NCBI GenBank assembly: GCA_002269645.1
Contig: NIVC01000251.1
Coordinates: forward strand, 62,001-126,000
DNA length: 64,000 nucleotides
DNA from: Macrostomum lignano
Lineage: Eukaryota
Direction: 5' to 3'
In this document: positions 1,057 through 58,737 of the stretch, piece by piece
Numbering within the stretch: position 1 is the first letter of the stretch
How the letters are laid out: every line of letters starts with the position of its first letter
The notes under the pieces: generated by a model
Told to the model about the DNA's origin: nothing
Databases searched by the model: none
What the model saw: only the letters and a program-made list of their open reading frames with translations
Program-made: the position numbers and the translations under genes

Positions 1057-2511
1057 ATGTCTCAGCTAACGCCAATTAGAGATCAATCCGCCACTGTTCC
1101 ACCTGGAATGGTTGGCGGCGGCGGCGGCGGCGGCGGGTCATCTTTAGCATCGTCTAGCGGCGGCGCTGGTCAAACCAATCCTACAGAATCATTCGATTCT
1201 GTTCAACGCTACCTGCGTTTAATGATGAAGCTGAAAGAGGTCACGGGCAAATACTTGGATCATTCGTTGGCTCAGTCGCTTCATCAGGCTGTCGAATTTG
1301 ATTTAGGCGACGCTGATTATTACGAACGAACTCCGCCCATACCGCAGGAGCTGCCTCAGTTACTCGATCAGATGGAAGTGCTATTAAAACACTTGATTAG
1401 TTGGGCAGATTTGCACCTGTGCCAACAGACCGCAGCTATGAGTATTGGTGCTAGTATGAGGCAGCAGCAGCAGCCTGGTCAGCAAGACCACCTATCTCTA
1501 GACGCTGAGTCCGTTCGTCAACGATCTCAAAACGACATCGAGCGTTGTCAAGCGTCTGTAGAGCCTCTAGCCGATTTAGTTAAGCGCCTGTCTCACAGTG
1601 CCGCTTCTGGAGCTGCCGCGGTTGCCGCTAAAACAGCCGCTGCCGCAGAGGCTGCTCGCGCCGCGGCTGCAGCGGCTGTTGAGGCGAAAGCGAAAGCCGA
1701 AGCCGAGGCTTCAGCCAGGGCGGCGATTGAAGAAGAGCGAGCTCAAGCGGCCCAGGCTGAAGCGGCCAAAATTGAAGCTGAAGCGGCCGCCGCATCAGCC
1801 ACCGCTGCCACTTTGCAAGCTGCAGAAGCAGAAATTTTAGCCAAGACTGAAGCTCAGTCTGCTGATTCTGCAGTTAGGCAAGAGGAAGTCCAACAAGATT
1901 TGAAGCAGGCCCCATCGTCTGTTCCAGCTTCTTCTGCATCAACTAGTCATTCTAGCACGCCTCAGCCTCAGCAGCCAGAACAGGAGCAGCAGAAAATAGT
2001 TGAAAAGAAAGAATTTGAAGAGCCAATGGAATCCAAAGCTCAACGAGAGGATGAAAAAGAAAAGCATCTACCAGTAGTTTCTTCTGCTACATCCGATGCC
2101 CCAATAAAATCGGAACAATTCCTGCCAACGTCGCTTGAGCAACAACCAACTCAAGCTAGTGCATCGACTTCTGCTACTAGCACTACTGTTAGTAGTAGTA
2201 CTACTTCATTAACAGTTAAACCTGAAGCAGCATTGACAACTGTCGGCGAGGATATGATGACATCTGAGGATGTTGACATGCTTTCAGCTGTTGATGCACT
2301 TATCGATTCTCAACAGCAGCTGGAGCAGCAACAGTCTCAAGCTGCTACCGATGCTTCTGCCACAGCTGCTCATACTACTGAACCGTCTACTACTACTACT
2401 TCTACAGCTGAAGATGTTGAAATGATTGACTTTATCACCTCCGCAACTGGAGACGATGGCGGAGGTGATGGCGGCGGTGGCGGCTCATCAAATAAACCAC
2501 CGACTGTGTAA
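1057..2511 (+). CDS. MED29: Mediator subunit 29 (intersex)-like protein with long Ala-rich and Ser/Thr/Gln-rich C-terminal extension; single exon, 484 aa
   Basis: First in-frame ATG at 1057 (track starts at GTG 1042), stop at 2511. Segment SFDSVQRYLRLMMKLKE...LDQMEVLLK resembles the recalled MED29 core (DFDPVQRYKMLIPQLKE...CDQLELCLR). Not database-confirmed. Confidence 0.65.
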   Translation: MSQLTPIRDQSATVPPGMVGGGGGGGGSSLASSSGGAGQTNPTESFDSVQRYLRLMMKLKEVTGKYLDHSLAQSLHQAVEFDLGDADYYERTPPIPQELPQLLDQMEVLLKHLISWADLHLCQQTAAMSIGASMRQQQQPGQQDHLSLDAESVRQRSQNDIERCQASVEPLADLVKRLSHSAASGAAAVAAKTAAAAEAARAAAAAAVEAKAKAEAEASARAAIEEERAQAAQAEAAKIEAEAAAASATAATLQAAEAEILAKTEAQSADSAVRQEEVQQDLKQAPSSVPASSASTSHSSTPQPQQPEQEQQKIVEKKEFEEPMESKAQREDEKEKHLPVVSSATSDAPIKSEQFLPTSLEQQPTQASASTSATSTTVSSSTTSLTVKPEAALTTVGEDMMTSEDVDMLSAVDALIDSQQQLEQQQSQAATDASATAAHTTEPSTTTTSTAEDVEMIDFITSATGDDGGGDGGGGGSSNKPPTV

Positions 2512-2769: not shown

Positions 2770-3724
2770 TAGACACAGCTACCCCTTCAGTAATGGACAC
2801 AGCTACCACTTTAGTAATGGACACAGCTATCACTTTAGTAATGGACACAGCTACCACTTTAGTAATGGACACAGCTACCACTTTAGTAATGGACACAGCT
2901 ATCACTTTAGTAATGGACACAGCTACCACTTTAGTAATGGACACAGCTACCACTTTAGTAATGGACACAGCTACCACTTTAGTAATGGACACAGTTACCA
3001 CTTTAGTAATGGACACAGCTACCCCTTCAGTAATGGACACAGCTGCCACTTTAGTAATGGACACAGTTACCACTTCAGTAATGGACACAGCTACCACTTT
3101 AGTAATGGACACAGTTACCACTTTAGTAATGGACACAGTTACCACTTTAGTAATGGACACAGCTACCCCTTCAGTAATGGACACAGCTGCCACTTTAGTA
3201 ATGGACACAGCTACCACTTTAGTAATGGACACAGCTACCACTTTAGTAATGGACACAGCTACCACTTTAGTAATGGACACAGTTACCACTTTAGTAATGG
3301 ACACAGCTGCCACTTTAGTAATGGACACAGCTGCCCCTTCAGTAATGGACACAGTTACCACTTTAGTAATGGACAGTTACCACTTTAGTAATGGACACAG
3401 TTACCACTTTAGTAATGGACACAGCTGCCCCTTCAGTAATGGACACAGTTACCACTTTAGTAATGGACACAGCTGCCACTTTAGTAATGGACACAGCTGC
3501 CACTTTAGTAATAGACACAGTTACCACTTTAGTAATGGACACAGTTACCACTTTAGTAATGGACACAGCTACCACTTTAGTAATGGACACAGCTACCACT
3601 TTAGTAATGGACACAGTTACCACTTTAGTAATGGACACAGTTACCACTTTAGTAATGGACACAGCTACCCCTTCAGTAATGGACACAGCTGCCACTTTAG
3701 TAATGGACACAGTTACCACTTCCA
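2770..3724. repeat. 24-bp minisatellite (CACAGCTACCACTTTAGTAATGGA), about 39 copies
   Basis: Direct reading; period 24 gives the MDTATTLV repeat ORFs. Confidence 0.97.
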
Positions 3725-3751
3725 GTGTACACAGCTCCTCTCATCCTGTTT

Positions 3752-4363
3752 ATGCCCGTCATCGCCTCCAACCCTCATTCGCCAACAAGCCGGCAATCGG
3801 CCCCTCGCCCTCACCTACGCAGCCTACTTGCCATTCTGTGCGTCAGCGGTGTCTCATTCCTGCTAGCACTGAGCAGTCATCAGTCAGCAGTGTTGTCCAG
3901 TTCTGTCATGACATCGACAGCCTCCGAACCGAGCGAAGCCTCAATGGGCCAGTGCTCGCTGCCTGGCGACAGTCTCAAGCCGTCAATTTTCACTAAAATA
4001 ATCCATCGAGAAGTTCCAGCAAAGATTCTGTACGAAGACGAATTGGTAATTTCGTTTCTTGGCTTGCCGCAGAACCGCGTCACCCCTGTGCAGTTTCTTG
4101 TTGTGCCAAAGAAACAACTGGCCACGCTGGAGGAGGCGAACTCTTGCGATGAAGCTGCTCTAGGCCGAATGTTTACCGTTGCTAGTCTGGTTGCTAAGCA
4201 ACAGGGAGTTACCAATGGTTACAGATTGGTTATTAATAATGGTAACGATGCTGGTCAAGAGGTGCCTCATCTGCATATTCACGTGTTTTCGCTTAACGCC
4301 CAAAAAGTAAAAAAATTGCGGAAAAGTGTCCTGTCAACTTGCAAAAAAATTTCCGTTTTTTGA
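3752..4363 (+). CDS. HINT: HINT-family (HIT) protein, copy 1; native C-terminus replaced after HLHIHVF
   Basis: In-frame ATG at 3752. SIFTKII..EVPAKILYED, GYRLVINNGNDAGQEVPHLHIHV are HINT motifs. Identity with copy 2 ends at 4288, then reads into unrelated AT-rich DNA. Confidence 0.8.
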   Translation: MPVIASNPHSPTSRQSAPRPHLRSLLAILCVSGVSFLLALSSHQSAVLSSSVMTSTASEPSEASMGQCSLPGDSLKPSIFTKIIHREVPAKILYEDELVISFLGLPQNRVTPVQFLVVPKKQLATLEEANSCDEAALGRMFTVASLVAKQQGVTNGYRLVINNGNDAGQEVPHLHIHVFSLNAQKVKKLRKSVLSTCKKISVF

Positions 4364-5936
4364 TTTTAAAGTGCCGAAAATTACACTTGAATAGCATTTT
4401 TAATTTTTTGCTTTTTTATATTATAGATTTTTTATATTGCATCTTTCGCAATTAAAACAATTTTCTTGAGTTTTCTTTGATTTGTTGTTGTGGTAATTAA
4501 ATTACAATTGATTTTTACATACTATTCTGTTGCATTTTCTTTAATTTTCTTCAACTGAATTTATAATTCAATTGCAATTGATTTGTAAAAACTATTTTGT
4601 TGCATTTTCTTCAATTAAAGTGGTTATTAAATTACAATAATTTGTGAAGTACAGCCTCCTTTGTAACAGTTATCTGATCCAACTTTTTTGAGTTGCCTTC
4701 ATTTTAATTGATTCAAATTGCATTTTAATAAATAAATGTTGGATGCTGAATGTTAAATGTGCACCTTTTTTCACAATTCATACACAAAAGGCTCGATGCA
4801 TCAGATCTTGGTATAGAGATAAAAATGACTAAAACTGTTTTAAGTCTCATCTGGCATAGCATGTTTTAATTTATAATGAAGAATTTCGATATCAGGATAA
4901 ATGAGTTATTAGACAGAAAAGGTTGGAATTATTCATGTTTTTTTGAGTATGCATGCTGAAATTTAGTTTTATCTTAACATTTATCGCTTTGGCCTAAAGT
5001 ACAATTATTCCCACATGACAATAAAAAGCTAAATAAAAACACATTTCGTTAAAATTAATGTAGTTGTTGGCGCAGGAAGAATGGAAAAGTATTTATCAAA
5101 ATTATGATGTCGTTTAAACTATGGTATAATAGCTTATCATTATTAATATATTATGTAACGATGATTATTATTATAATCGAAGTATTTTTATCTTGTTATA
5201 ATCAGGGGCAGACAAAATCAGACAAAACAAAAATGCAACATCATTTTTTGATGTATCAGTTTTAATTAAATTAATATTCGTTAGTTATTTTAAATTCGGA
5301 GTGTGTGGTAAGTTATTTAGGTTTTAATGGGACGTTACCAACAATGAGAACAAGAACGATTGTTGCATAAATTGTTTGTTAATTACAGATGTATGTAAAG
5401 GGAAAAACAGACATTCATGTTAAGTAATGCGTAGATACTACGAGTAGTCTGTTGCATTTTTGCAAAGAAGATATTCCATTTTGGAATATCACATAGGAGA
5501 AATATTATAATATTGCTACAGACAATTGAAAGTAAAGTAAATATATATTTATCTCCAGGCAGCTGACCTTTTCGTATTGTACTTTGAAGTTCCTATTCTT
5601 GAAATTAAAATGTTTATCTATTAGGAAATCCATAGGTAGTCAATATCTTTTAGCTTTACCATCATGTTCATTAGTAGTATTAATGGTGCTTTTCCAATCC
5701 TAGCATTGTGGCCAGTGAAAAATTTATCAGCAATGACAAAAGCCCATGATTTACTCTGAAGTATTCTATTTATAAATGCTAATCATATAATACATTCATT
5801 TCCTGTTAGAAATCTTCCAGACTTGGTTAGCTGATATTAAAAAAGGGTTAGACTAATTTGATAACGTTCGTGTGCTCTAGATTTTAAGTCCACAGTTACC
5901 CCTCCAGTGTACACAGCTCCTCTCATCCTGTTTCAG

Positions 5937-6509
5937 CCCGTCATCGCCTCCAACCCTCATTCGCCAACAAGCCGGCAATCGGCCCCTCGCCCTCACCTAC
6001 GCAGCCTACTTGCCATTCTGTGCGTCAGCGGTGTCTCATTCCTACTAGCACTGAGCAGTCATCAGTCAGCAGTGTCGTCCAGTTTTGTCATGTCATCGAC
6101 AGCCTCCGAACCGAGCGAAGCCTCAATGGGCCAGTGCTCGCTGCCTGGCGACAGTCGCAAGCCGTCAATTTTCACTAAAATAATCCGCCGAGAAGTTCCG
6201 GCAAAGATTCTGTACGAAGACGAATTGGTAATTTCGTTTCTTGGCTTGCCGCAGAACCGCGTCACCCCTGTGCAGTTTCTTGTTGTGCCAAAGAAACAAC
6301 TGGCCACGCTGGAGGAGGCGAACTCTTGCGATGAAGCTGCTCTAGGCCGAATGTTTACCGTTGCTAGTCTGGTTGCTAAGCAACAGGGAGTTACCAATGG
6401 TTACAGATTGGTTATTAATAATGGTAACGATGCTGGTCAAGAGGTGCCTCATCTGCATATTCACGTGTTTGCTGGACAACCTATGAGTTGGCCACCTGGC
6501 ACTGACTAA
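5937..6509 (+). CDS. HINT: HINT-family protein, copy 2, intact C-terminus (GQPMSWPPGTD); HINT2-like N-terminal leader
   Basis: HIT motif HLHIHVF and conserved WPPG tail. Reading frame is open from an acceptor (ctcctctcatcctgtttcag|, exon start 5937); first genomic in-frame ATG only at 6090. Confidence 0.88.
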   Translation, partial: PVIASNPHSPTSRQSAPRPHLRSLLAILCVSGVSFLLALSSHQSAVSSSFVMSSTASEPSEASMGQCSLPGDSRKPSIFTKIIRREVPAKILYEDELVISFLGLPQNRVTPVQFLVVPKKQLATLEEANSCDEAALGRMFTVASLVAKQQGVTNGYRLVINNGNDAGQEVPHLHIHVFAGQPMSWPPGTD

Positions 6510-6734
6510 TTGAAGTTAGCGATTATCGATCTCCTCGTTGGAGTACATTTTAAAAACCTTTCATTGTATAATAAAATTAAGTCTTCTATTGAAGCCAAAT
6601 AGTCTGCCTTTGATTGGAAATATATACTCATATATATCGAATTTTTTATTTTTGTGCGTCTTTAGTAAACTCGTACAAATAAACGCTTTTTGCTTCTTTT
6701 TAATTCGATTCATAGTTTTACAGGAAATTTCCTT

Positions 6735-7075
6735 GTTAGTGCTCAATAAAGTTCAAGACGATTCTCACTGAAGTTTAAGGCGATTGTCACTGAAGTTCAA
6801 AACGATTCTCACTGAAGTTTAAGGCGATTGTCACTGAAGTTCAAAACGATTCTCACTGAAGTGCAAGACGATTCTCACTATAGTTCAAGACGATTCTCAC
6901 TATATTTCAAGACGGTTCTCACCACAGTTCACGACGATTCTCACCACAGTTCACGACGATTCTCACCACAGTTCACGACGGTTCTCACCACAGTTCACGA
7001 CGATTCTCACCACAGTTCACGACGATTTCTCACTATAGTTCAAGACGATTCTCAATAAAGTTCAGGACGATTCTC
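6735..7075. repeat. 22-bp degenerate minisatellite (GTTCAAGACGATTCTCACTGAA)
   Basis: Direct reading, about 15 copies. Confidence 0.9.
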
Positions 7076-7260: not shown

Positions 7261-8325
7261 ATGCTTTGTCGCATCTACCAACGCTGCCACCATTCTACTC
7301 AACCGTTTGCTTTGCTGCAACACTTTGCAAACAAATCTTTGCCAATCAATTTCTATAATTGCGCCTCTACAAGTGCTTATGCTACTACTAGCCTGAGTTG
7401 TTTGACTCAATCTTGCGCTATTAATCGACGTCAATTGTCGCAGGCTTCTCTAACTGATCAGTCCTCAGAAAGTAAACAATTGCTTTCACGCCAGCAACAG
7501 TCCAAGCCGAAACTGCATTGGACTGAAGAGTTTCGCATTCGATCGCCGAAGGTTCCACTGAGTAGACTGCAGGACGAGCCAGTTGTAGCCATAGACATTG
7601 AAAGCGACGCCTTTAACGATAGACGGATAGCATTTCTATTGCGTCGGGGCATTTTAAAAGTGCCGCTGCATCCGAGAATGCGCGGTCTAGGCAAGATACT
7701 TAGCTATTGCGGTTTGTTTAGCCTGCCCTACTTGATGTTCTGCAAATGGGCTGGCGGTACACCTTTGCTTGGCGAGATGACCACTTATGCTATTCCAGCT
7801 ACAGTAGCTGGTGTCTGTATTGGGTACCTTGGCATCAATCTAGCCTTAGAGAAGGCCTATCTTGCTAATAGAATCTATTCGATAGCATTAGACGAAAATA
7901 ATCCAACAATGGTTTATATTAGCACCTTGCCTGCTGGCGGTTGGCTTCACGGACAGCATCGCAGCTACGTGACTACTATTGATAATATCGTAGTGGACAC
8001 CGAAAATTCCAGTAGAAATTGGGCTAAACTGAGCTTCAAAGCTGGCGGCGAAGGTCTGTCATTCTCTTTGCCGATAAGCAAACGAAAATGTTTTGTAGTC
8101 GATGGCAGGGCAATGTCGGCGTTCACCTCAGCAATCTGGTCGTCTAGTTCGGCTGCATCGGCGGCTAAGCTATCGGACATGCGCGGCTTCGATCAGGTGT
8201 CCTTGCCGAATGAACGGGAAATTGATCGTCACCTTGACAGTTTAATGACTCCTGAAAATGCCAGTCAGTCGAGTGAGAAGTCTGAAGAATCTAATCAGAA
8301 TAAGGAACAGAAATCCACTGCTTGA
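7261..8325 (+). CDS. Single-exon 354-aa protein with mitochondrial-type N-terminus and two hydrophobic helices; TMEM70/TMEM186/TMEM223-like (tentative)
   Basis: Long non-repetitive ORF, ATG 7261 to TGA 8325. R/S/L-rich leader, hydrophobic segments ILSYCGLFSLPYLMF and IPATVAGVCIGYLGINLAL followed by a beta-rich stretch, as in TMEM70-type proteins. Coding likely; family assignment weak. Confidence 0.6.
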   Translation: MLCRIYQRCHHSTQPFALLQHFANKSLPINFYNCASTSAYATTSLSCLTQSCAINRRQLSQASLTDQSSESKQLLSRQQQSKPKLHWTEEFRIRSPKVPLSRLQDEPVVAIDIESDAFNDRRIAFLLRRGILKVPLHPRMRGLGKILSYCGLFSLPYLMFCKWAGGTPLLGEMTTYAIPATVAGVCIGYLGINLALEKAYLANRIYSIALDENNPTMVYISTLPAGGWLHGQHRSYVTTIDNIVVDTENSSRNWAKLSFKAGGEGLSFSLPISKRKCFVVDGRAMSAFTSAIWSSSSAASAAKLSDMRGFDQVSLPNEREIDRHLDSLMTPENASQSSEKSEESNQNKEQKSTA

Positions 8326-9596: not shown

Positions 9597-10321
9597 GGTT
9601 TTTTCGTTTGATTTCATAAAATTGTCAGTTGATTTCGTCCATAGAAGTTGGCAGCGCGGCCATAGAGTCTATGGCAATAAAGTGCGCTGTTTTCCAATTG
9701 AATTCATAACTTTGCCACTTCATTTCGACTTGGCGCGCGGAGTGGCTCAAACACTGCCAGAGGGGGCTGGGATATCAGTGGGTGAATATCCATGGCCAAA
9801 CCTCTCATAGAAATGAAAAGCCTAGCTATATGAACGTGTCCTCTTCTTGGGCAACAGTCACCTTCCTTGTGTGCCTAAAAATGGCTGCATACGCGTCCAT
9901 TGGAAACGACAGAAGGCATCTTGTCATTGAAGCAATGAACAGGGGTGAGAAAGTGACGGACATAGCGCGATGGCTCAACATCAACAAACAGACAGTGTAC
10001 TCCATAGTGAAGGTGTACAAAGAGACTGGGCGCATCGACAAGCTGCCGAAAGGAGGAAACAATCCTAAGAAGCTGGCCGATCCAATCGCACAAGAACTCG
10101 TTTCTGACATGAAGACAATCCAATGTTGACATTAAAGGAGATGAAGGCGAAACTGCACACGACTTTCTGTTGCCTTTCTACTGAATATGTCGAAATGAAG
10201 TGGCAAAGTTATGAATTCAATCGGAAAACAGCGCACTTTATTGCCATAGACTCTATGGCCGCGCTGCCAACTTCTATGGACGAAATCAAATGACAATTTT
10301 ATGAAATCAAACAAAAAATCA
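9597..10321 (+). mobile_element. Internally deleted Tc1/IS630-type DNA transposon: about 133-bp TIRs enclosing transposase HTH region
   Basis: 9597-9729 is a near-perfect reverse complement of 10189-10321, with TA flanks. Internal ORF KVTDIARWLNINKQTVYSIVKVYKETGRIDKLPKGG then frameshifted DNPMLTLKEMK is a Tc1-like HTH. Confidence 0.85.
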
Positions 10322-20839: not shown

Positions 20840-22503
20840 GGCAGGCAGGCAGACACTAAGACAGACAGACAGACAGGCAGACACTAAGACAGACAGACAG
20901 ACAGACAGACAGGCAGGCAGACAGACAGGCAGACACTAAGACAGACAATAGGACAGACACTGAGATAGACACTAATGCAGACATAATACAGACACTTTAA
21001 TACAGACTCTAAGACAGACACTGAGACAGGCATTAGGAGACACTAGGACATCGCTAAAACAAATCAACAGTCACACAGGGCTCATGCATGCAATTATAAT
21101 ATTTTGCTTGCAGCATATTTGAAACTGTCAATGTCACTTTTCGTGCCCCTATCTGCAGAGACATAAATTTACATGTAGTAGTTCGACATTTGACGCGTTC
21201 GCGGTGTTCTTGTGTGTCATTTTTCTTCTTTTTTTAGAAAACCACATGAAAATTGACGGTTACTTTCATTGAATCTCTAGCTGACGCTGTCTACTCTTTA
21301 TCAATTTGAGTTACAAGGACTGGCATTTAGCTAAAAAGTACCATTCGTTCTTGTCTCTGTCTGTTACACTATTCATTTTTAATCAGGGCCTTATATGTAT
21401 GCTACTCGTATGTTACACTATGATCCCTGTGATCCTTCTGAGTTGGTAGTTAGTGACACTGCATGTTCTTCATACTATTTATCTCGTATAATTGGTATTA
21501 GCCTTCTTCATGACCGTCTGAATGGGTCATAAACCTTCTATGATCTTCATGACCCTTTTGTATTAGTCATAAACCTTCTATAGTCTTTATGACTTGTTTG
21601 AATTGGTCATAAAGCTACTATGATCTTTATGACCCGTCGGAATGGATCATAAACCTTCAATGATCTTCGTGGCCCGTCTGAATTGGTCATAAACCTTCTA
21701 TGATCTTTACGACTTGTCTGAATTGGTCATAAATTTTTATGATTATCCTGACTCCACTAAATCGATCATAAACTTTTCAACCTCGTATTTGACAGCCTAA
21801 TTGAATATTGTCATCACGAACTGCATAATCGTTGATGTTGCAAACTCTGTACAAACCTGTGCATTTCCCGCAGAAAAATCCAACCGAAGATTCAAACGAC
21901 CCCCTAGATTTGGAGGCCTGCAACCGTGGCTTGTCCCTTGCCAGCTGGCCCGGTCGCTATGACGTCATGCCCTACCGCCCAGGTGTCACCCTGTACATTG
22001 ACGGCGCTCACACAGTTGAAAGCGTATCCCAGGCCGCCAGCTGGTTTGCTAATCTGCAACAGGGTCGAATTGGCGCTAAGAAAAAATTGCTATTCAATAG
22101 AACCGGCGACAGAAGGCCTAAGGATCTGCTGGCTCAGTTGGTTAAATTAGGATTTGTTCAGGCTGCATTTTGTCCCAATGTTGTGGACTCAAGGAGCTCA
22201 GGCAGCAGCCGTAGTGCCGATCTATTCAGCGCGTTGGCTTCCGGTGACTCTAGCGGTATCCGACTCAAAGTTGAAGAGAATAAAACCGCTTATGAGCAGC
22301 TTGATAGCCAATGCGATTGTCGAATGTTCGATTCCGTAGCTGAAGCCCTCGAATGGTTGGTTACTGACGGAAATGGCTCGGACGAGATGCAATGCGATGT
22401 ACTTGTCACCGGCAGTTTGCACTTGGTTGGCTGTCTGTACGCAATGCTAGCGCCCCAGGTGGCCGACGGGGAGACAACTGGGGAGGCTAGAGCTATTAGC
22501 TAG
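14430..22503 (+). CDS. FPGS: Folylpolyglutamate synthase; exons 14430-14595, 14979-15316, 20049-20444, 21874-22503 (509 aa)
   Basis: Motifs [81 protein letters not shown]. All introns GT-AG with matching phases (1,0,0); total 1530 nt. Confidence 0.96.
14636..14857. repeat. 16-bp minisatellite (GGCGCCCCTTGGTGCT) in FPGS intron 1
   Basis: Direct reading; a related 15/16-bp array recurs at 32232-32335. Confidence 0.93.
15375..15830. repeat. 42-bp minisatellite (core AACCGTTGCTAGGGTATAATATCCCATTTCTAAGG) in FPGS intron 2
   Basis: Direct reading, about 10 copies. Confidence 0.92.
16470..20040. repeat. 22-bp satellite (CAATTGTCACTCTCAACCTCGC) with recurrent variant cassettes, about 3.5 kb, FPGS intron 2
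   Basis: Direct reading; runs to within a few bases of the acceptor at 20048. Confidence 0.97.
20470..21050. repeat. (AGAC)n microsatellite with degenerate flanks, FPGS intron 3
   Basis: Direct reading. Confidence 0.95.
21500..21780. repeat. Degenerate about 40-bp repeat (GAATTGGTCATAAACCTTCTATGATCTTTATGAC...)
   Basis: About 6 diverged copies. Confidence 0.8.
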
Positions 22504-42569: not shown

Positions 42570-43142
42570 CCCATGACAGAGTGCGGAGTTTTAAAGTATC
42601 TAAGTATACGAGCGTAGTCTTCGGTGTCGAATACGGAGACTCGTTTGGTAGCCCGGAGAAACCGGGTGAGCCGTGGGATGTTCTCGGGCCGGCAAGCGTC
42701 GTTCAGGGACGGGTTGGGCCCGAGGTGGTTGAGCCGGTCTCAGTTGAAGGCCGGGCAGTGGCAGACGAAGTGCTTGGCGTCTTAGTTCTCAAGGTTGCAG
42801 AAGGGGCAGAGTTCGCTCAGCGGGCGCTTCGGAGGAAGCAGTGCCTGGCAAAGCAACCGTGACCCGTGAAGATCATAGTGAGAGCGCGGATATCTTTTCG
42901 ATTTGGTTCAAAAGATTTTCTGCAGCTTGGGGGACGGGTTGGGCACTGCCGCACGGGATTTTGGCGGCAGTTGGAAATGCCATCCCATCTGCGCAGGTGC
43001 CAGGATGTCCGCCCAGTCGTTAATCTGACGATTAATGACCGTGGCGGGGATGGGGGCCAGAGGCACGGGGCCAAGGAGCGAGCTGGAGCTACCCGTCTTA
43101 GCGAGGGAGTCAGCGAGCTCGTTACCTTGCGTGTCCTGGGAC
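42570..43142 (-). mobile_element. Second, diverged non-LTR 3' fragment of the same type, inverted
   Basis: Minus strand, with frameshifts: VPGH..GNELADSLAK (RNase H end), RKDIRALTMIFTGHGCFARH, KHFVCHCPAF..DRLNHLGPNP. Confidence 0.85.
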
Positions 43143-44707
43143 CCTCCTCTTCTCTCCCCTCTTCTCTCCCCTCCTCTTCTCTCCCCTCCTCTTCTCTCCC
43201 CTCTTCTCTCCCCTCCTCTTCTCTCCCCTCCTCTTCTCTCCCCTCCTCTTCTCTCCCCTCTTCTCTCCCATCCTCTTCTCTCTCCTCCTCTCCCTCATCT
43301 TCTCTCCCCTCCTCTTCTCTCCCCTCTTCTCCTCTCCCCTCCTCTCCTCTCCCCTCCTCTCCCCTCCTCTTCTCTCCCCTCCTCTCCTCTCCCCTCCTCT
43401 CCTCTCCCCTCCTCTCCTCTCCCCTCTTCTCTCTCCTCTTCTCTCCCCTTCTCTTCTCTCCCCTCCTCTTCTAAATAGGAAGATTACTTAGAAACGTGTC
43501 TGTCTGCTCTGCTCTCTGTGTAAATTCAAGGGTCGTCATCACAAACCCGAAACATCACAGCTCCGAAAACACTTCCCATTATAAACCCGAAATATCATTA
43601 CTCCGAAAGATCTCGAACGCCCAATGGTTTTTGTTTTTCGGGTTTGTGATGTTTCGGGTTTATGATATTTTGGGTTTATGATATTTCGGGTTTATGATAT
43701 TTCGGGTTTATGATATTTCGGGTTTATGATATTTCGGGTTTATGATATTTCGGTTTTATGATATTTCGGGTTTATGATATTTCGGTTTTATGATATTTCG
43801 GGTTTATGATATTTCGGGTTTATGATATTTCGGGTTTATGATATTTCGGGTTTATGATATTTCGGGTTTATGATATTTCGAGTTTATGATATTTCGGGTT
43901 TATGATATTTCGGGTTTATGATATTTCGGGTTTATGATATTTCGGGTTTATGATATTTCGGGTTTATGATATTTCGGGTTTATGATATTTCGGGTTTATG
44001 ATATTTCGGGTTTATGATATTTCGGGTTTATGATATTTCGGGTTTATGATATTTCGGGTTTATGATATTTCGGGTTTATGATATTTCGGGTTTATGATAT
44101 TTCGGGTTTATGATATTTCGGGTTTATGATATTTCGGGTTTATGATATTTCGGGTTTATGATATTTCGGGTTTATGATATTTCGGGTTTATGATATTTCG
44201 GGTTTATGATATTTCGGGTTTATGATATTTCGAGTTTATGATATTTCGGGTTTATGATATTTCGGGTTTATGATATTTCGGGTTTATGATATTTCGGGTT
44301 TATGATATTTCGGGTTTATGATATTTCGGGTTTATGATATTTCGGGTTTATGATATTTCGGGTTTATGATATTTCGGGTTTATGATATTTCGGGTTTATG
44401 ATATTTCGGGTTTATGATATTTCGGGTTTATGATATTTCGGGTTTATGATATTTCGGGTTTATGATATTTCGGGTTTATGATATTTCGGGTTTATGATAT
44501 TTCGGGTTTATGATATTTCGGGTTTATGATATTTCGGGCTTATGATATTTCGGGTTTATGATATTTCGGGTTTATGATATTTCGGGTTTATGATATTTCG
44601 GGTTTATGATATTTCGGGTTTATGATATTTCGGGTTTATGATATTTCGGGTTTATGATATTTCGGGTTTATGATATTTCGGGTTTATGATATTTCGGGTT
44701 TGTGATG
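43143..44707 (-). repeat. Pyrimidine tract (43143-43471), short forward 16-mer copies (43537-43610) and long inverted 16-bp array TTTCGGGTTTATGATA (43640-44707)
   Basis: Reverse complement of the 38818-39540 array. CATCACAAACCCGAAA at 43537 and TTTCGGGTTTGTGATG ending 44707 form inverted ends. Confidence 0.93.
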
Positions 44708-46431: not shown

Positions 46432-49400
46432 CATCAGCAGCAACATATAGAGGCCGCTATCTACTTTGGAAACTTATTGCATGGTAAGAATCTCTTATGT
46501 TTGACTGTATACATAGTGCATGCATTATTTGTTACTGCATACTTTGGAATATTACTGAAACCCCTCCCAAAATATATGCAGGCGAAATGAAATGGCGCCC
46601 CTTATAATGGAACGGCGCCCCCTCAAATGAAATGGCGCCTCCAATCAAATGAAATGGCGCCCCCCTCAAATGGAATGGCACCCCCCTCAAATGGAATGGC
46701 GCCCCCCTCAAATGGAATGCGCCCCCCTCAAATGGAATGGCGCCCCCCTCAAAAGGAATGGCGCCCCCCTCAAAAAAAATGGCGCCCCCCTCAAATGGAA
46801 TGGCGCCCCCCTCAAATGGAATGGCGCCCCCCCTCAAATGAAATGGCGCTCCCCTCAAATGGAATGGCGCCTCCAATCAAATGAAATGACGCCCCAATCA
46901 AAACAAAATGGCGCCCCTCAACACCACTCGCACCCACTCCAATGAATATGTGGCATCACGAGTTGAATTTTACATATCTTACTTAAGACTGAGATAATAA
47001 TTTTAACAAGATCAACTCACAGATGCCTTCAGTTGGTGATTTTTATGAACAAATTTAAATTAGGCTATTCATACTCATGTATGAATAGATTGAGACAGCT
47101 TACAAGAATACTTGTATAACCCCAACCCAATGCAGTGATTTTGTGAAGTGCGGCCACTTATTGTCAATGCTATCATAATAATCCTACATAACATAGCTGG
47201 GGATTTCAAGTCCTTTGTCTTCAATTTGATTCTCCAACAGGGTTGGGCCGTTGAAGGGGGTCGTGTTGGTTAATTTTGTCTTAAGTATTACATCTATTAT
47301 AAGAACTCTGAGTCCTAACTGAATTGGACACTTAGGGTAAGAATGAATATGAAGTGTTCTCAAATCTTTTACGGTCGGGGAGCTAATTAAAACTGGAATT
47401 TCTAACATTTCTATAACATCTATAAGGCAGTTTCACAATTCTAAATTCCTGTTATAACAAAAAAGTCAAAGACCTGTTCAAGCATTCCACTTCAATTGAA
47501 GGGCAGGGCGAGTCTGGTTTGAATAACCAATTAGTTGAAATTGTTAAAGTTGTGAATGATTCCAAATCGGTGAATAATAGCGAATGAAAAGAGGTGTCAA
47601 AAATTGTGGGCAAGTTTAATTGCTGTTAAAATCTTTCAGCTAATCTAACAATTGAACTGGAATTAGAATGGCTGTCGAGAATGAATATTCAAATGGGAAA
47701 ATTTCGCTTATAAAAGTGTCTAAATTCCGAGAGGGCATTGTCACGCGGTATAGTTCAGTTACAATGACTGGGATGTCTTGCTGACAATGGCTATAGTTGC
47801 ATTGTGTTGTGTGCTGTGGTCAACTGCAGGCAGGCCACGTATCTCACACTTGGTGTCTAATTGATCCTTACACGATTGGTTGCGTAATCTCCATGAGGTA
47901 GTATATCTAGCATAATATTGTTGAGTTTGAGTCTGTTGTGTACACAGCTAATCTATATTTGTTTAAATTATAACCGTCTTAAATGGCGAAAGCATGCTTG
48001 GAAGATTCGTGTTGAGGTGGGACAGATGGTGCCAAATTTAGGTGATAATACTCTTTGTCATGACGACAAGATATTGTAGTTGTTAGCTGATGCTGTTTGA
48101 AAGAGGTTTGGGAAGAAAGAGAAAAGAGAGAAGAGAAGAGAAGAGAGGAGAGAGAGGAGAGGAGAAGAGAGGAGAGAGAGGAGAGGAGAAGAGAGGAGAG
48201 AGAGAAGAGGAGAAGAGAGGAGAGAGAGGAGAGGTGAGGAGAATAGAGGAAGGAAAGGAGAGGAGAGGAGAGGAGAGGAGAATAGAGGAAGGAAAGAAGA
48301 GGAGAGGAGAGGAGAGGAGAGGAGAAGAGAGGAGAGAGAGGAGAGGAGAAGAGAGGAGAGAGAGGAGAGGAGAGGAGAGGAGAGGAGATGAGAGAGAGGA
48401 GAGAGAGGAGAAGAGAGAGATGAGATGAGCTAAGTGAGACTCACAAGCCGTCCCCAGCAACAGCCCCAGCGCAGTCTCTTTCACCCCATCCCTCACAAAA
48501 CCCACCCGCAGGCGGCTGTCCCAGCCTGCCGCCGCTGCCTCCGCCACCTCACTCGATGTCAAGCGGCACCTCAGTTGGAGTCTCCATGCCGCCGAGCTCC
48601 GCCCTGGCAACCACAGCCATCGCCGAATCCGCTGCAAACTTCTACCAGCCTCCGCATCAGCAGCCGCACCATCAGAGCCAGCATCCTCATCCTCATCATC
48701 ATCATCAGCAGCAGCAGCACTTTGCCATGCTTCAGCAGCACTGCGGAGCCGCTGCAGCCGCAGCTGCCGCCGCCGCGGCCGCCGCAGCATTTCGAGGCAA
48801 GCCGCGTCGCGGGATGCTCAGACGGGCGGTGTTCAGCGACCAGCAGCGGAAAGGCCTGGAGAAGATGTTCCAGCGGCAGAAGTACATCAGCAAGCCCGAC
48901 AGGAAGAAGCTGGCTGACAAACTCGGATTGAAAGACTCGCAGGTGAGTGCATAGAGAGAGACTTGCTCTTTGCGGAGGGTGATAAAAGTATCGGTGAAAT
49001 TGCGATTATTTTGATATTTTGAGTTCAGGGGCTAAGTTTTCATGAGATGAAAAGGAATTGAAGTTTATTGCCAAAAGACTAGATTATAATGAGATTTGCG
49101 TGTGATTCAGGTAAGATTTAGGTGAGATTCGGGTGAGATTTGGGTGAGATTCGGGTGAGATTTGAGGGAGATTTTGGTGAGATTTGTGTAAGATTCGGGT
49201 GAGATTTGTGTGAGATTCGGATGAGATTTGTGTGAAATTCGGGTGAGATTTGTGTGAGATTCGGGTGAGATTTGTGTGAGATTCGGGTGAGATTTGTGTG
49301 AGATTCGGATGAGATTTGTGTGAGATTCGGGTGAGATTTGTGTGAGATTCGGGTGAGATTTGTGTAAGATTCGGGTGAGATTTGTGTGAGATTCGGGTGA

Positions 49401-51587: not shown

Positions 51588-52530
51588 GTCAGTCAGCATC
51601 AAACTTGGGTTGTCAGTGGGTTGTCAGTCAGCATCAAACTTGGGTTGTCAGTGGGTTGTCAGTCAGCATCAAACTTGGGTTGTCAGTGGGTTGTCAGTCA
51701 GCATCAAACTTGGGCTGTCAGTGGATTGTCAGTAGGCATCAAGCTTGGGTTGTGTCAGTAAGCATCAAGCTTGGGTTGTGTCAGTAAGCATCAAGCTTGG
51801 GTTGTGTCAGTAAGCATCAAGCTTGGGTTATGCCAGTAAGCATCAAGCTTGGGTTGTGTCAGTAAGCATCAAGCTTGGTTTGTGTCAGTAAGCATCAAGC
51901 TTGGGTTGTGTCAGTAAGCATCAAACTTGGGTTGTCAGTCAGCATCAAACTTGGGTTGTCAGTCAGCATCAAACTTGGGTTATCAGTCAGCATCAAACTT
52001 GGGTTGTCAGTCAGCATCAAACTTGGGTTATCAGTAAGCATCAAACTTGGGCTGTCAGTGGGTTGTCAGTAAGCATCAAACTTGGGTTGTCAGTAAGCGT
52101 CAAACTTGGGTTGTCAGTCAGCATCAAACTTGGGTTATCAGTAAGCATCAAACTTGGGCTGTCAGTGGGTTGTCAGTAAGCATCAAACTTGGGTTGTCAG
52201 TAAGCGTCAAACTTGGGTTGTCAGTCAGCATCAAACTTGGGTTGTCAGTCAGCATCAAACTTGGGTTGTCAGTAAGCATCAAACTTGGGTTGTCAGTAAG
52301 CGTCAAACTTGGGTTGTCAGTAAGCATCAAACTTGAGTTGTCAGTCAGCATCAAATTTGGGCTGTCACTGTCAGTAAGCATCAAACTGAGCTGTCAGTGG
52401 GTTGTCAGTCCGCATCAAATTGGGCTGTCAGTAAGGGTCCCGCTTCCGTGTCAGTGGGTTGTCAGTCCGCATCAAATTGGGCTGTCAGTAAGGGTCCCGC
52501 TTCCGTGTCAGTGGGGTGTCAAACGCGGGT
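51588..52530. repeat. 24-bp family minisatellite (GTCAGTCAGCATCAAACTTGGGTT) with 35-37-bp variants
   Basis: Direct reading. Confidence 0.93.
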
Positions 52531-53679
52531 TGTCAGGCTTGCATGTGACGCTAGTTTAAAATACACACAATGGCACGCAATTTGTTTTCGCCCATCTGCT
52601 CACAAAATGATGGATGCTTGAGCTGATTATAAATCTAGCGAGTTAATTAACTTAATATTTAATCTTCAAGTTAAAGGCTTATTATTTTTGTTGAATTTTG
52701 CATTTTGTTATTAAGCACATTTTGATGGAATATTTCTGCTATATTAATAATAATCTGATTCCATAACGGAAATCCTTGGGAATTGGCGTTTAGCTAAAGT
52801 ATATAGATCCATTTAATTGCAGTCATCAATCTTGCAGCTGTCGATTCAATCAAGGCTTAGATGGGGAAAAATTCATTTTCGAAAACTGACACATTCGACT
52901 CGCACTCAAACCTCTCCCGCCTCTAGCGCTTTAATTGCCTTTCCATCAAAATTTGGCGCAAATCTTCTTCTTATAGAATTGAGCGGAGGCTCTCAAGTGC
53001 GTCAAACCTACAGGAGCCGCACTGAGTATGAAAACATGCGGCATGTATGCAGGGGATGTTGATGATTAAATTACAGTAATTCGTCTTTATGAAGTAGACA
53101 GAGGGGTAGATGATGAGCAGTAGATGTGTCAGATACACACGCAGATTTGATTGAATGATAAGCAATCCCTGTTATCGGCATTGATGCAAGTTTAGTTAAC
53201 AGTCTCCATGCTCGAAATAGACAGAGAGATGACACACGCGTTACGCGGGTTAAATACACAGTTTATATGTTGAACACATTTTCTCCATGCTTTTATAATA
53301 AGATATTTACGCAACTAAGGCCTTTATTTAAACAAGAATTGAACCCCCCCCCCGATCAGCGCCCGTAGCGTAGCCTAGTAACAACACGGCGCAACACACA
53401 AAAACAAATATGACACGGCCGCTAAAAGGTGTTTGAAATGAGGCTAGCGGACTATCAATATACAATTTTGTATCTTATGGTCTACAGGTGTCAAGTCTAA
53501 TTATTATAGAGCGCACATGTAAACTAATTAACGTGTTAAATTAATTTTACGTTGCTATACAACTAATAGACTTGTATAGAATTTGTTTGTGGCTTTTTAT
53601 ATAGAATTATTGTTTTAATTACAATTGATATGTAAATATATAACTTATAGTAGCAATCTAATAAACATGTATCTTAAGA

Positions 53680-56097: not shown

Positions 56098-58737
56098 TCA
56101 ACCAAGGATGACCTCCTCGTCAGCCTCGGGCACCTCGACTGTTTCTAAGAAATGTTCGCGCACCTGCCGACCATGATCGAACCCAGGGTCCAGCATGCCG
56201 ACCGGTGCCCGTCCGAGTTGGTTTCGGAGTTTCCTTGGCCTACCAACCGATCGAGTGGTGGCCGCGGCGGACGAGATGATGGCCGTTGGGGACACCCCAA
56301 CAGGCAGCTGCTGGCTTGGCTTGGCGTGGGTCAGAGCGTGGGTCCGCAGGTTCGTTCTCTGGCCAAACCGCCGGTCGCAGACCTTGCTCGGGGTAGAATA
56401 GTAGAACATATAATTAATAATTAATAATTAAACATGGCCTTTAATAGTATCATTAATTTAAATACATCTTTTTACAAATTAATAATAACTCCCTACTTCT
56501 AATTTCTATCCCCACACCGAATCTATCCCCAATTCTAATTTCTCTCCCTATCTCTAATCTCTCTTCATATCTAATCTCTCATGCAAATCTCTAATCTCTA
56601 TCAACAAACCTAATCTCCCCACGTCTAATCTGTCACCATATCTAATCTTTCTCCCTATCTTTAATCTCTCTCTCTCTTCATATCTAATCCCTATCGCTAT
56701 CTCTAATATCTCTCTCCATATCTAATCTCTCTACTTATCTCTAATCTCTATCTCCATATCTAATCTTTCTCCCTATCTCCATACCTAATCTCTTCCTTAA
56801 TCTCTATCTCTCTCCACATATCTAATCTTTCTCTTTATATCTAATCTCTGACCCCATGTTTTATCTCTCTTCCTATATTAAATTATCTCTCATACCTAAT
56901 CTCTCTCCCAATCTCTAATCTCTGTACCTGTCTCTAATCTCTCATTCTGCACAAAGCAATCTAATCATGAAACCCCAATAAAATTATGCAATCACCTGAC
57001 ACTTAAACGGCTTCACTCCCGTATGCGTCACCATATGCTTGTTAACGTCTCCCTTGTCAGCGAATCGTTTCTGACAGATCGGACAGGGGAACTGCCTCTG
57101 ACCGGTGTGGCAGGTCAGGTGTCGGCGCAGATTAGTGTGCTGGTGAAAGCATTTGGCGCAGTAGGCGCACTGGTAGCATCTCTGATCCCCTCTGCCGCCT
57201 GTCTTCCTCAGCCGATGCACCGACTTGACGTGGTTGGCCAGCAGATGGGATTCAGCGAACGCCGACTGGCAAATGGCACAGATGCACGGCCGAGAGAACG
57301 ACGAGCCGGAGCCGACTCCGACATCATCAGCCATCGGATCGTCGCCATCCTCGTCGCTGGCATCATTCTCGTCGTAGCCGTCGTCTTCATCGGACTCATC
57401 CTGAGCAGACTGGTGCGCGTCCTCTGAGTGCCGTTTGAGTCCAGCCAGGCTGGGGAACCACCGACCGCAGCGGGGGCACTCGTAACTACCCGGATGGCTC
57501 AACAGGTGCCGGCGTAGTTCGGCCTCATCAACAAACCGACGATCGCACAGGGTGCAACGAGGACCGCTAATATTTTTATTAATATTACTATTGGTAGTAG
57601 TATTATTATTAAGACTTCTAAGCCGACGCTGCTTCTTTGGAGACGAGCCAGCCTCTTCTCCTTCATCACCTTGATCGGGCCGAGCAGCAGTCTCAACTTC
57701 GACATCGTCAGCCGACTGTCCGCGGCTGCTGAATTGCAGCAGACGAGAGTCGCGCAGATGGGCCTGACGAACGTGACGGCTCAGGTATTCAACGCGAGCG
57801 TAGCAATTGCCGCATAGACGGCACTGGAATCGCTTGCGACTGCCTTCGGGTAGAAGCACCAGGGCGCTCTGCAATGCGTCGTGAACTGACAGAGGCTCCT
57901 GATTAGAATTAGCTTCATCATCTGGTTCCTTATCAACCAGTTCCGTTGGAGCTTTTCTAGGCGAACTGGACATTGCGGTGAAGCCTTCTTGGGCCGCTAC
58001 CAGAGCGCGAACCTTGAGAAAAAGAAGACAAAATATTGTTTTGATTATTGTGCTATGTGGTATTAATTACTTAGCCCACGGATTTAGCTTCAGATCTGGC
58101 GCCAAAATACCCTACAGTCTTGTAGCTTCAGATGTGACGCTAAAATACCCTACTCTCTCTTGTAGCTTCAGATCTAGCGCCAAAATCACGGGTCCTCTCT
58201 AGCTTCAGTCTGATGTCAGAAAACTAATTAGAATTGGAAAACTGGCATAACTAAAGTTAAAGACAGGTACAAACCGCTAACCTGACTGCCAACGCTATCC
58301 GACAATCTTTTAGAAGCGGTTGCAACCCGAATAGTCGATATTGGCGCAGTGGAGCTAACGGCAGTTGAATTAGTTGACATTGACACCGGTTTCACAGCCG
58401 ATCTGGGTATGCTGATAACACAGCAATTATTTCTTCGTTCCACTGTAATACCACTAGACAAAGTTGTAGCTGTATTGTTAGTAGAACCTACTATGCTACT
58501 AACAGTAGCTGGAGTCACTGCACCAACAGATTTTGACACTGTAGAACCGGAGGCGTCCGACAGTCGAGTAATTTTAGTTCCAACACTATCATTTGATGGT
58601 TCAATTTTCACTTGGACTACAACTGGTTTAGAGGTGCCACCACCCACGCTGGAGGCAGTGCTAAAGTGGCGAACCAGTGGAGGCGATGCAGAAGAAGAGA
58701 CTATTTCAACTCTTCTTGCTGCTGCTGTTGAAGACAT
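56098..58737 (-). CDS. C2H2 zinc-finger protein, 7 fingers; exons 58737-58282, 58012-56996, 56382-56098 (585 aa)
   Basis: Seven CxxC...HxxxH fingers with TGQRQF and TGVKPF linkers; the last finger is split KCQ|VCDRRF by a phase-0 GT-AG intron; 1758 nt in frame. Confidence 0.92.

What the first reader, a model, noticed from the sequence alone, without database searches (positions are those of the whole stretch)
3745..5945. ATG versus CAG swap between HINT paralogs: a start codon apparently supplied by splicing (spliced-leader AUG)
Seen: copy 1 reads ctcatcctgtttATG CCC GTC ATC (3752) and copy 2 reads ctcatcctgtttCAG|CCC GTC ATC (acceptor 5935-5936). The 2-nt change turns the initiator into a textbook polypyrimidine-CAG acceptor at the same codon. 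Copy 2 has no in-frame ATG until 6090, yet keeps the 51-codon leader open. Known: flatworm spliced leaders end in AUG, which can act as the initiator Met. Inference: SL trans-splicing at 5937 would give copy 2 the same MPVIAS... N-terminus that copy 1 encodes genomically, a side-by-side case of genomic versus SL-donated initiation.
Basis: partly seen in the sequence, partly recalled or inferred. Interest (0 to 1): 0.85.

Follow-up and report, generated by a model that had tools for sequence, protein, structure and literature searches.

The report
Spliced-leader start codon; ATG probably artefact
In this flatworm (Macrostomum lignano) genome, a membrane-anchored HINT enzyme gene most likely gets its start codon from the trans-spliced leader RNA, a known flatworm mechanism, and the "genomic ATG" in its neighbouring copy is most likely a polishing error that wrote the leader's last bases into the assembly.

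Summary
Copy 1 reads cctgtttATG|CCC (ATG 3752-3754) and copy 2 reads cctgtttCAG|CCC (CAG 5934-5936).

The window is Macrostomum lignano Mlig_3_7, scaffold NIVC01000251.1. This species' 35-nt spliced leader (SL) ends in ATG. Copy 2's site fits the published SL acceptor motif [T/C]TNCAG. GenBank annotates every copy as a 5'-partial CDS starting exactly at CCC. The 51-codon leader contains a hydrophobic anchor, which a paralog with its own ATG also has. SL-donated initiation is therefore well supported, but it is a known mechanism (Cheng et al. 2006).

The "side-by-side" contrast is probably not biological:
- Six HINT copies on three homeologous scaffolds read tttCAG, tttATG or ttcATG. The variant bases always equal the SL's last 3-4 nt (CATG).
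- The unrelated 483-aa gene upstream shows the same CAG/ATG difference at its own annotated 5' end.
- Two scaffolds with only three single-base substitutions over about 6 kb of non-satellite sequence differ by multi-base blocks only at these two junctions.
- The assembly was Pilon-polished with STAR-mapped RNA-seq.

Copy 1's ATG is therefore most likely an SL fossil left by polishing. Genomic reads would settle it.

The parts
1057..1059 (+). ATG directly before the annotated 5'-partial CDS of the upstream 483-aa gene. This is a parallel case of the same CAG/ATG difference.
   Evidence: Window/L002 reads caaattcATG|TCTCAG. L003 reads cacattcCAG|TCTCAA. L001 reads cacattcATGTCT|CAA. L001 versus L003 differ here by AT>CA.
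1060..2511 (+). CDS of a 483-aa protein with no Pfam match. It is annotated 5'-partial and lies upstream on the same strand as the HINT copies, so it may share an operon with them.
   Evidence: Called genes of L002; ORF list; no Pfam family; no homologs found.
2772..3721 (.). 24-nt satellite (about 40 copies) that fills most of the spacer upstream of copy 1.
   Evidence: Tandem Repeats Finder.
3708..3751 (+). Acceptor-proximal segment shared with copy 2 (ccagtgtacacagctcctctcatcctgttt). It is a pyrimidine-rich tract, not a Kozak-like context.
   Evidence: Alignments.
3752..3754 (+). Copy 1 'ATG'. It equals the last 3 nt of the SL and sits where the other copies have CAG. It is most likely written in by RNA-seq polishing.
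   Evidence: GenBank starts the CDS at 3755, not at this ATG (P0124).
3755..4363 (+). HINT copy 1: 202 codons plus stop. It is a truncated duplicate that keeps HLHIHVF, lacks the C-terminal AGQPMSWPPGTD, and carries the unique changes R74L and R84H.
5890..5933 (+). Copy 2 pyrimidine-rich tract upstream of the acceptor.
5934..5936 (+). Copy 2 CAG, the 3' splice acceptor for SL trans-splicing. tttCAG matches [T/C]TNCAG.
   Evidence: The annotated transcript/CDS 5' end is at 5937.
5937..6509 (+). HINT copy 2: 190 codons plus stop, a complete HINT domain. It reads M-PVIAS... once the SL AUG is joined.
5997..6053 (+). Hydrophobic segment LRSLLAILCVSGVSFLLAL in the leader. It is a putative signal anchor or targeting segment.
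   Evidence: Kyte-Doolittle 19-residue maximum of 2.16. Paralogs P0004 and P0005 have N-terminal hydrophobic segments too.
6090..6092 (+). First in-frame genomic ATG of copy 2 (codon 52). It is the alternative initiator that would give a HINT1-like soluble protein.
   Evidence: UniProt/ML2 gene models start at this Met (P0001, P0125).
6450..6470 (+). Histidine triad HLHIHVF.
6570..6575 (+). AATAAA about 60 nt after the copy 2 stop codon. Likely poly(A) signal.
   Evidence: Read directly from the sequence.
6742..7075 (.). 22-nt satellite in the spacer between copy 2 and the next + strand gene (354 aa, ATG at 7261).

Best explanation
The locus is a same-strand gene row in Macrostomum lignano: a 483-aa gene, HINT copy 1, HINT copy 2, then a 354-aa gene. 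The spacers between them are filled with satellites.

The HINT pre-mRNAs are SL trans-spliced at a Y-tract-CAG acceptor that sits exactly at a codon boundary. The 35-nt SL ends in AUG, so the junction reads ...UUGCAUG|CCC GUC AUC. The SL therefore supplies the initiator Met for an N-terminally extended HINT, M-PVIAS..., whose leader carries a hydrophobic anchor or targeting segment. Leaky scanning to Met52 could also give a soluble HINT1-like form.

The true genomic base triplet at this site is CAG in all copies. The ATG in copy 1, and the ATG or cATG in other scaffold copies and in the neighbouring 483-aa gene, was introduced when the Canu assembly was Pilon-polished with RNA-seq reads that carried the last few SL bases.

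What is shown:
- the sequences and the six-copy comparison;
- the recurrence at a second gene;
- the polishing method;
- the annotation start points;
- the SL sequence.

What is inferred:
- that the polishing step caused the ATG;
- that the SL AUG is the codon actually used for initiation.
For: 1. Organism and SL. The closest proteins and the exact contig are M. lignano GCA_002269645.1, scaffold NIVC01000251.1. The SL is CGGTCTCTTACTGCGAAGACTCAATTTATTGCATG.

2. Acceptor. tttCAG matches the top SL acceptor motif [T/C]TNCAG.

3. Transcript end. Gene 5' ends in this annotation come from SL-trimmed read peaks plus TransDecoder. All five annotated HINT copies are 5'-partial CDSs starting at PVIA, although the frame stays open 17-24 codons upstream. 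The transcript models therefore begin at the junction.

4. The leader is probably coding. It has a hydrophobic 19-mer (KD 2.16). Paralog P0004, with a genomic ATG and an ordinary 5' context, and P0005 also have N-terminal hydrophobic segments before the HIT core. The only changes inside the hydrophobic segment among the six copies are synonymous.

5. Artefact. The six copies read tttCAG (3), tttATG (1) and ttcATG (2). The variant bases equal the SL suffix ATG or CATG.
- L001 copy 1 and L003 copy 1 are identical from -60 to +540 except for these 3 adjacent bases, and over 1,075 nt downstream.
- Across about 6 kb of non-satellite sequence, L001 and L003 differ by 3 single-base substitutions and a few small indels. 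The only multi-base substitutions are at the two SL junctions.
- The unrelated 483-aa gene shows the same swap.
- The pattern follows the scaffold: L001 3/3 ATG, L003 0/3, window 2/3.
- The assembly was polished with Pilon using RNA-seq mapped by STAR. The same study ran STAR with --alignEndsType EndToEnd and up to 1000 multimaps for its transcriptome mapping. End-to-end mapping forces short SL overhangs to align as mismatches.

6. Precedent. SL AUG is used as the initiator in Schistosoma (Cheng et al. 2006).
Against: - No raw genomic or RNA reads could be examined. Exact look-ups for M-started products found no transcript contigs.
- The paper does not state the STAR parameters used for the polishing step itself.
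- A simple majority pile-up would predict a gradual decay of SL bases upstream. The observed changes stop sharply at -3 or -4.
- The window scaffold is 92-97% identical to the other two. The near-identity argument is therefore strict only for L001 versus L003 and applies to the window's copy 1 by analogy.
- Window copy 1 carries another dinucleotide difference (CAT versus CGC at codon 84). Natural or erroneous multi-base changes therefore do occur in it.
- Use of the SL AUG rather than Met52 is untested. Leader substitutions are 3 nonsynonymous to 2 synonymous, which is uninformative.
Confidence: 0.7

Rival explanations
1. Copy 1 really has a genomic ATG and copy 2 really has a CAG acceptor, so the two paralogs reach the same MPVIAS N-terminus by different routes: genome-encoded versus SL-donated.
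For: The assembly reads that way. A CAG>AAG>ATG path would keep a working acceptor at the intermediate step. The window scaffold is diverged enough (92-97%) for real differences to exist.
Against: - The same swap occurs at three junctions on L001 and at the neighbouring 483-aa gene.
- The variant bases track the SL suffix, including the extra c in ttcATG.
- L001 and L003 are otherwise nearly identical.
- GenBank's transcript for copy 1 starts after the ATG. In the assembly, copy 1 has no AG at that SL-defined end.
- The context upstream of the ATG is a pyrimidine tract with T at -3, not an initiation context.
- RNA-seq polishing is documented.
Confidence: 0.15
2. The leader is not translated. 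The real initiator of both copies is the internal ATG (copy 2 at 6090, or 6126), giving an ordinary soluble HINT1-like protein. The SL AUG then opens only an incidental in-frame extension, or is skipped.
For: Met52 and Met64 lie 26 and 14 residues before the IFTKII motif, similar to HINT1 (alignment). The ML2/UniProt models start at this Met. Substitutions cluster just before Met52 (codons 47, 50, 53). A 51-codon open frame is not improbable by chance.
Against: - An AUG 33-35 nt from the cap, in-frame and with G at -3, would normally be used by scanning ribosomes.
- The hydrophobic segment shows only synonymous changes.
- Paralogs P0004 and P0005 have N-terminal hydrophobic segments that begin at bona fide ATGs.
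Confidence: 0.2
3. An unannotated upstream cis exon supplies the ATG and is spliced to the CAG at 5936.
For: The same AG can serve cis- and trans-splicing in flatworms (PMC12582326).
Against: The RNA-seq-based annotation ends the gene at 5937 in every copy and labels it 5'-partial. The 1.57-kb spacer is AT-rich and no gene is called there.
Confidence: 0.05
4. The ATG alleles are real and arose by RNA-templated copying of the SL 3' end into the genome, that is, cDNA-mediated conversion at SL junctions.
For: The variant bases equal the SL suffix, and the swap recurs at independent junctions.
Against: A cDNA tract would be expected to carry all of the SL or none of it, not 2-3 nt. The upstream flanks are intact. 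A documented technical route exists.
Confidence: 0.03

Closest known systems
Flatworm SL 3'-terminal AUG used as initiator Met (Cheng, Cohen, Ndegwa & Davis 2006, J Biol Chem 281:733; 'slORFs', PMC9851317)
   Same: The SL ends in AUG, the acceptor sits at a codon boundary, and the ORF is open from the junction with no exon-encoded upstream AUG. The N-terminal extension carries targeting-like information.
   Different: It is shown here only by sequence and annotation, in a free-living macrostomid rather than Schistosoma. There is no translation evidence.
HINT1/HINT2 histidine-triad nucleotide-binding proteins (PDB 3o1z, 1kpa, 4inc)
   Same: HIT domain (PF01230), the HxHxHxx triad, and in copy 2 the C-terminal G-x-x-M-x-W-P-P-G. 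E = 6e-30 to HINT1. HINT2 also has an N-terminal targeting extension.
   Different: The leader has about 51-63 residues with a hydrophobic 19-mer, which looks more like an anchor than the HINT2 presequence. Copy 1 lacks the C-terminal strand and Trp.
Reference-polishing artefacts from RNA-seq (Pilon with STAR-mapped RNA reads in Mlig_3_7, PMC5730564)
   Same: Non-genomic RNA bases at read ends, here the SL, replace genomic bases at highly covered junctions. The result differs between near-identical scaffold copies.
   Different: I found no published description of this specific error class (SL suffix overwriting the AG acceptor). It is inferred here from three junctions.
Relic SL sequences in dinoflagellate genes (mRNA recycling by retroposition; from my own knowledge)
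   Same: SL-derived bases are found in genomic DNA directly upstream of coding sequence.
   Different: Those cases are retroposed cDNAs with new flanks. Here the upstream flank is fully conserved and only 2-3 bases differ.

Membership tests
SL trans-spliced mRNA with SL-donated initiator AUG | The species has an SL whose last three bases are AUG | tested here: met
   M. lignano was identified. The SL ends ...TTGCATG (PMC8629364).
SL trans-spliced mRNA with SL-donated initiator AUG | Pyrimidine tract plus AG acceptor at the junction | tested here: met
   Copy 2 reads ctcatcctgtttCAG|, which matches [T/C]TNCAG. Copy 1 as assembled has TG, not AG.
SL trans-spliced mRNA with SL-donated initiator AUG | Transcripts carry the SL joined at this nucleotide | tested here: inconclusive
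   The support is indirect. The GenBank 5'-partial CDS starts exactly at the junction in all copies, and this annotation's 5' ends come from SL-read peaks. No reads or transcript contigs were available, and reads would multi-map among the copies.
SL trans-spliced mRNA with SL-donated initiator AUG | SL AUG is in frame with the main ORF, with no in-frame AUG between the junction and the conserved domain's N-terminal extension | tested here: met
   The junction is at a codon boundary and the first in-frame ATG is codon 52.
SL trans-spliced mRNA with SL-donated initiator AUG | Translation starts at the SL AUG | not testable with these tools
   This needs Ribo-seq, N-terminal proteomics or reporter assays.
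HINT branch of the HIT superfamily | HIT domain with the HxHxHxx motif | tested here: met
   PF01230 at E = 1.9e-21 (copy 2) and 9.7e-21 (copy 1). HLHIHVF is present in both.
HINT branch of the HIT superfamily | C-terminal GGxxMxWPPG segment | tested here: met
   Copy 2 has AGQPMSWPPG, aligned to HINT1 GGRQMNWPPG. Copy 1 does not have it; it is replaced by SLNAQKVKKLRKSVLSTCKKISVF.
RNA-seq polishing artefact | The assembly was polished with RNA reads that can carry SL bases | tested here: met
   Pilon was run with STAR-mapped RNA-seq. EndToEnd mapping was used in the same study, although it is not stated for the polishing step.
RNA-seq polishing artefact | The variant bases equal the SL 3' end, recur at independent junctions, and are the outliers between near-identical scaffolds | tested here: met
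RNA-seq polishing artefact | DNA-only reads disagree with the assembly at these bases | not testable with these tools

The most novel reading that the evidence does not exclude
The ATG alleles are real. In M. lignano, SL acceptors whose SL AUG is the initiator would then be repeatedly converted into genome-encoded ATGs, at two neighbouring genes and on several homeologs. This might happen by RNA-templated copying of the SL's last bases, which would be a route by which trans-spliced genes lose their dependence on the SL.
Probability: 0.08. Interest if true: 0.8.

Novelty: new member of a known kind. Interest (0 to 1): 0.3.

Why it matters
Biologically, this adds a clear candidate to the known class of flatworm mRNAs that need the SL's AUG. 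It is a HINT hydrolase whose N-terminal anchor or targeting segment exists only after trans-splicing.

It also explains why GenBank lists these proteins as 'partial'. And it explains why the UniProt models, which start at the internal Met and fuse the two copies, are wrong.

Practically, if the artefact reading holds, the M. lignano reference (Mlig_3_7) carries false ATGs and destroyed AG acceptors at SL junctions.

Tried and rejected
- An SL RNA gene in the window: none was found. There was no 16-mer match at up to 3 mismatches and no Rfam hit.
- Longer SL suffixes in the window and loci: they occur at chance level. The 8-mer plus GTAAG at 46476-46488 is an ordinary cis donor at the end of a polyQ exon.
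- Transcript evidence via exact look-ups of MPVIAS-started products of copy 1 and copy 2: nothing is on record. One attempt had wrong coordinates.
- Look-ups of two other window ORFs to extend the annotation: not on record.
- Homology search with the 483-aa neighbour, to sample more SL-partial genes: no hits, not even to the query itself, probably because of low complexity.
- The paralog loci L004-L006 (Mlig012978): no CAG/ATG swaps. That paralog has an ordinary ATG with an A-rich context.
- A search for poly(A)-type 'A-isation' between L001 and L003 as a second signature of RNA polishing: inconclusive.
- Retrocopy origin of the ATG copies: rejected, because the upstream flanks are conserved and do not resemble the SL.
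- dN/dS on the leader: too few changes to be informative.
Full report
**Observation.** The two sites read exactly as reported. Copy 1 has ctcatcctgtttATG|CCCGTCATC, with ATG at 3752-3754. Copy 2 has ctcatcctgtttCAG|CCCGTCATC, with CAG at 5934-5936. The duplicated block is about 581 bp at 97.9% identity, 3708-4288 versus 5890-6470. In copy 2 the frame is open for 24 codons upstream of 5937 without an ATG, and the first in-frame ATG is codon 52 at 6090. Copy 1 is a truncated duplicate. It keeps the histidine triad HLHIHVF but replaces the last 12 codons (AGQPMSWPPGTD) with an unrelated 24-residue tail. It also carries the unique substitutions R74L and R84H in the conserved RKPSIFTKIIRRE stretch. 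Both copies hit the HIT domain. The closest solved structures are HINT1 (E = 6e-30) and HINT2.

**Source and annotation.** The top protein hits are Macrostomum lignano. An exact look-up places the window on Mlig_3_7 (GCA_002269645.1), scaffold NIVC01000251.1, with window base 1 at about 62001. GenBank annotates both copies, and their counterparts on two other scaffolds, as 'partial' proteins that begin with PVIA... This means the CDS starts at the base after the ATG or CAG (P0003, P0121-P0124). That holds even for copy 1, where the ATG is directly upstream in the assembly.

In this annotation, gene 5' ends were set by TBONE from RNA-seq reads that contained the spliced leader. The reads were trimmed and mapped, and ORFs were then called by TransDecoder (PMC5730564). 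The frame stays open 17-24 codons further upstream, so a 5'-partial ORF starting exactly at CCC means the transcript model begins at the junction. The UniProt models from the older ML2 assembly start at the internal Met and fuse the two tandem copies into a two-domain chimera (P0001, P0125).

**Is the SL-AUG idea viable?** Yes.
- M. lignano has a single 35-nt SL, CGGTCTCTTACTGCGAAGACTCAATTTATTGCATG (PMC8629364).
- The top motif at its SL acceptor sites is [T/C]TNCAG, which tttCAG| matches.
- The junction falls on a codon boundary, so SL joining gives AUG CCC GUC AUC, that is MPVI....
- The leader contains a hydrophobic 19-mer, LRSLLAILCVSGVSFLLAL (Kyte-Doolittle 2.16).
- The more distant M. 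lignano paralog P0004 (67% identity in the core) begins at an ordinary genomic ATG (...aataaacagaATG) and also has an N-terminal hydrophobic segment. So does P0005, a 62%-identical relative from an unnamed source.
- Among the six copies, the only changes inside the hydrophobic segment are synonymous, although the numbers are tiny.
- All reported flatworm SLs end in AUG. In Schistosoma mansoni the SL AUG is in frame in 28% of trans-spliced transcripts and is required by more than 40 cDNAs (Cheng et al. 2006, as summarised in PMC9851317 and PMC12582326).

The mechanism is therefore known, and this gene is a plausible new instance.

**Is copy 1's ATG genomic?** Probably not. Each of three homeologous scaffolds carries the tandem pair, which gives six copies.

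| Scaffold | Copy 1 | Copy 2 |
|---|---|---|
| Window | tttATG | tttCAG |
| L001 (NIVC01000175.1) | ttcATG | ttcATG |
| L003 (NIVC01000100.1) | tttCAG | tttCAG |

Four points argue for an artefact.

1. The variant bases are always the SL's own 3' end, ATG or CATG. The changes never extend to -5, where the SL has G.

2. L001 copy 1 and L003 copy 1 are identical from -60 to +540 apart from the three adjacent bases at -4 to -2. They remain identical for a further 1,075 nt.

3. From L001 4512 to 11025, satellites excluded, L001 and L003 differ by three single-base substitutions (6139, 6397, 9180) and a few small indels. The only multi-base substitutions are AT>CA at 7564-7565 and CAT>TCA at 9997-9999.

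4. The 7564-7565 site is the annotated 5' end of a different gene, the 483-aa protein upstream of the HINT pair. There L003 reads attcCAG|TCT, while L001 and the window (1057-1059) read attcATG|TCT.

So the same CAG-to-ATG difference occurs at three SL junctions and follows the scaffold: L001 3/3, L003 0/3, window 2/3. Independent natural double and triple substitutions at exactly these positions, on a background with 0.05% single-base substitutions, are not credible.

A technical route exists. The Canu assembly 'was polished with Pilon v. [quoted passage not shown] The same study ran STAR with --alignEndsType EndToEnd --outFilterMultimapNmax 1000. End-to-end alignment forces reads that start a few bases inside the SL to align across the acceptor, placing the SL bases as mismatches.

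The direction of the error is clear. RNA reads can create ATG, nothing technical creates a consensus CAG acceptor, and SL-defined 5' ends require an AG. If this reading is right, the ATG is a fossil of the SL-exon junction. It then indirectly confirms that SL...AUG|CCCGUC mRNAs exist.

**Caveats.**
- I could not inspect reads or another assembly.
- The paper does not give STAR settings for the polishing step.
- A plain majority pile-up would predict a gradual rather than a sharp upstream limit.
- The window scaffold is only 92-97% identical to the others. For the window's own copy 1 the argument is therefore by analogy with L001 versus L003 and with the neighbouring gene.
- Window copy 1 also has another dinucleotide difference, at codon 84.

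**Locus context.** The 483-aa gene (1060-2511), copy 1 (3755-4363), copy 2 (5937-6509) and a 354-aa gene (ATG at 7261) are all on the + strand. A 24-nt satellite (2772-3721) and a 22-nt satellite (6742-7075) sit in the spacers. PMC8629364 describes M. lignano operons with repeat-filled spacers. This row fits that picture, but operon status was not tested here.

**Verdict.**
- The inference that copy 2 obtains its initiator from the SL is well supported but not directly demonstrated. It is a new member of a known kind.
- The headline claim, a natural side-by-side of a genomic and an SL-donated initiator, is most likely an assembly artefact. I put that at about 0.8 for the ATG alone, and about 0.7 for the whole explanation.
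- The most useful consequence is a warning about SL junctions in Mlig_3_7.

Noticed in passing
window 1057-1059 and 1060-2511; L001 7564-7570; L003 5060-5063: The upstream 483-aa gene (no Pfam family, Gly-rich N-terminus) is also annotated 5'-partial from an SL-type junction. It shows the same CAG (L003) versus ATG (window, L001) difference. Its first exon-encoded in-frame Met is codon 17, so it may be a second gene that depends on the SL AUG.
   Followed up: partly
window 3755-4363 and 5937-6509 (UniProt A0A1I8IEX6, A0A1I8H0U3, A0A1I8IY45): The UniProt/ML2 gene models (P0001, P0125, P0002) fuse copy 1 and copy 2 into a two-HIT-domain chimera that starts at the internal Met. They skip the leader and copy 1's tail, so they are probably mis-predictions.
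   Followed up: partly
window 2772-3721 and 6742-7075; L003 9800-9960: A 24-nt satellite (about 40 copies, 93% matches) lies upstream of copy 1 and a 22-nt satellite downstream of copy 2. In L003, degenerate units of the first satellite also precede copy 2, so the tandem duplication included satellite units.
   Followed up: partly
L003 10001-10573 versus L001 10001-10609 and 12237-12809: L003 copy 2 is a mosaic. Its first 165 or more codons carry the variants of the L001/L003 copy 1 type (P5, M97, H129, S166), but its 3' end is copy 2 type. This suggests gene conversion between the tandem copies. L001 is closer to L003 upstream of copy 2 and closer to the window scaffold downstream.
   Followed up: partly
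L004 3059-3066 / L005 3058-3065: A 452-aa 5'-partial CDS starts at ctgag|ACTGCATGGCATCGG. TGCATG, the last 6 nt of the SL, lies 2 nt inside the annotated start and is out of frame. This could be chance or another SL remnant.
   Followed up: no
window 46476-46488: ATTGCATG|GTAAG matches the SL 3' end plus the SL RNA donor. However, it sits at the end of a CAG-repeat (polyQ) coding exon and looks like an ordinary cis 5' splice site. Three 8-mer SL suffix matches in the window is about the number expected by chance.
   Followed up: yes
window 21829-22503: An open frame has a weak Mur_ligase_C match. It is probably the last exon of a folylpolyglutamate synthase-like gene. Elsewhere there is a C2H2 zinc-finger ORF at 56984-57973 (- strand), and repeat-derived ORFs at 52047-52559 and 42866-43474.
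   Followed up: no
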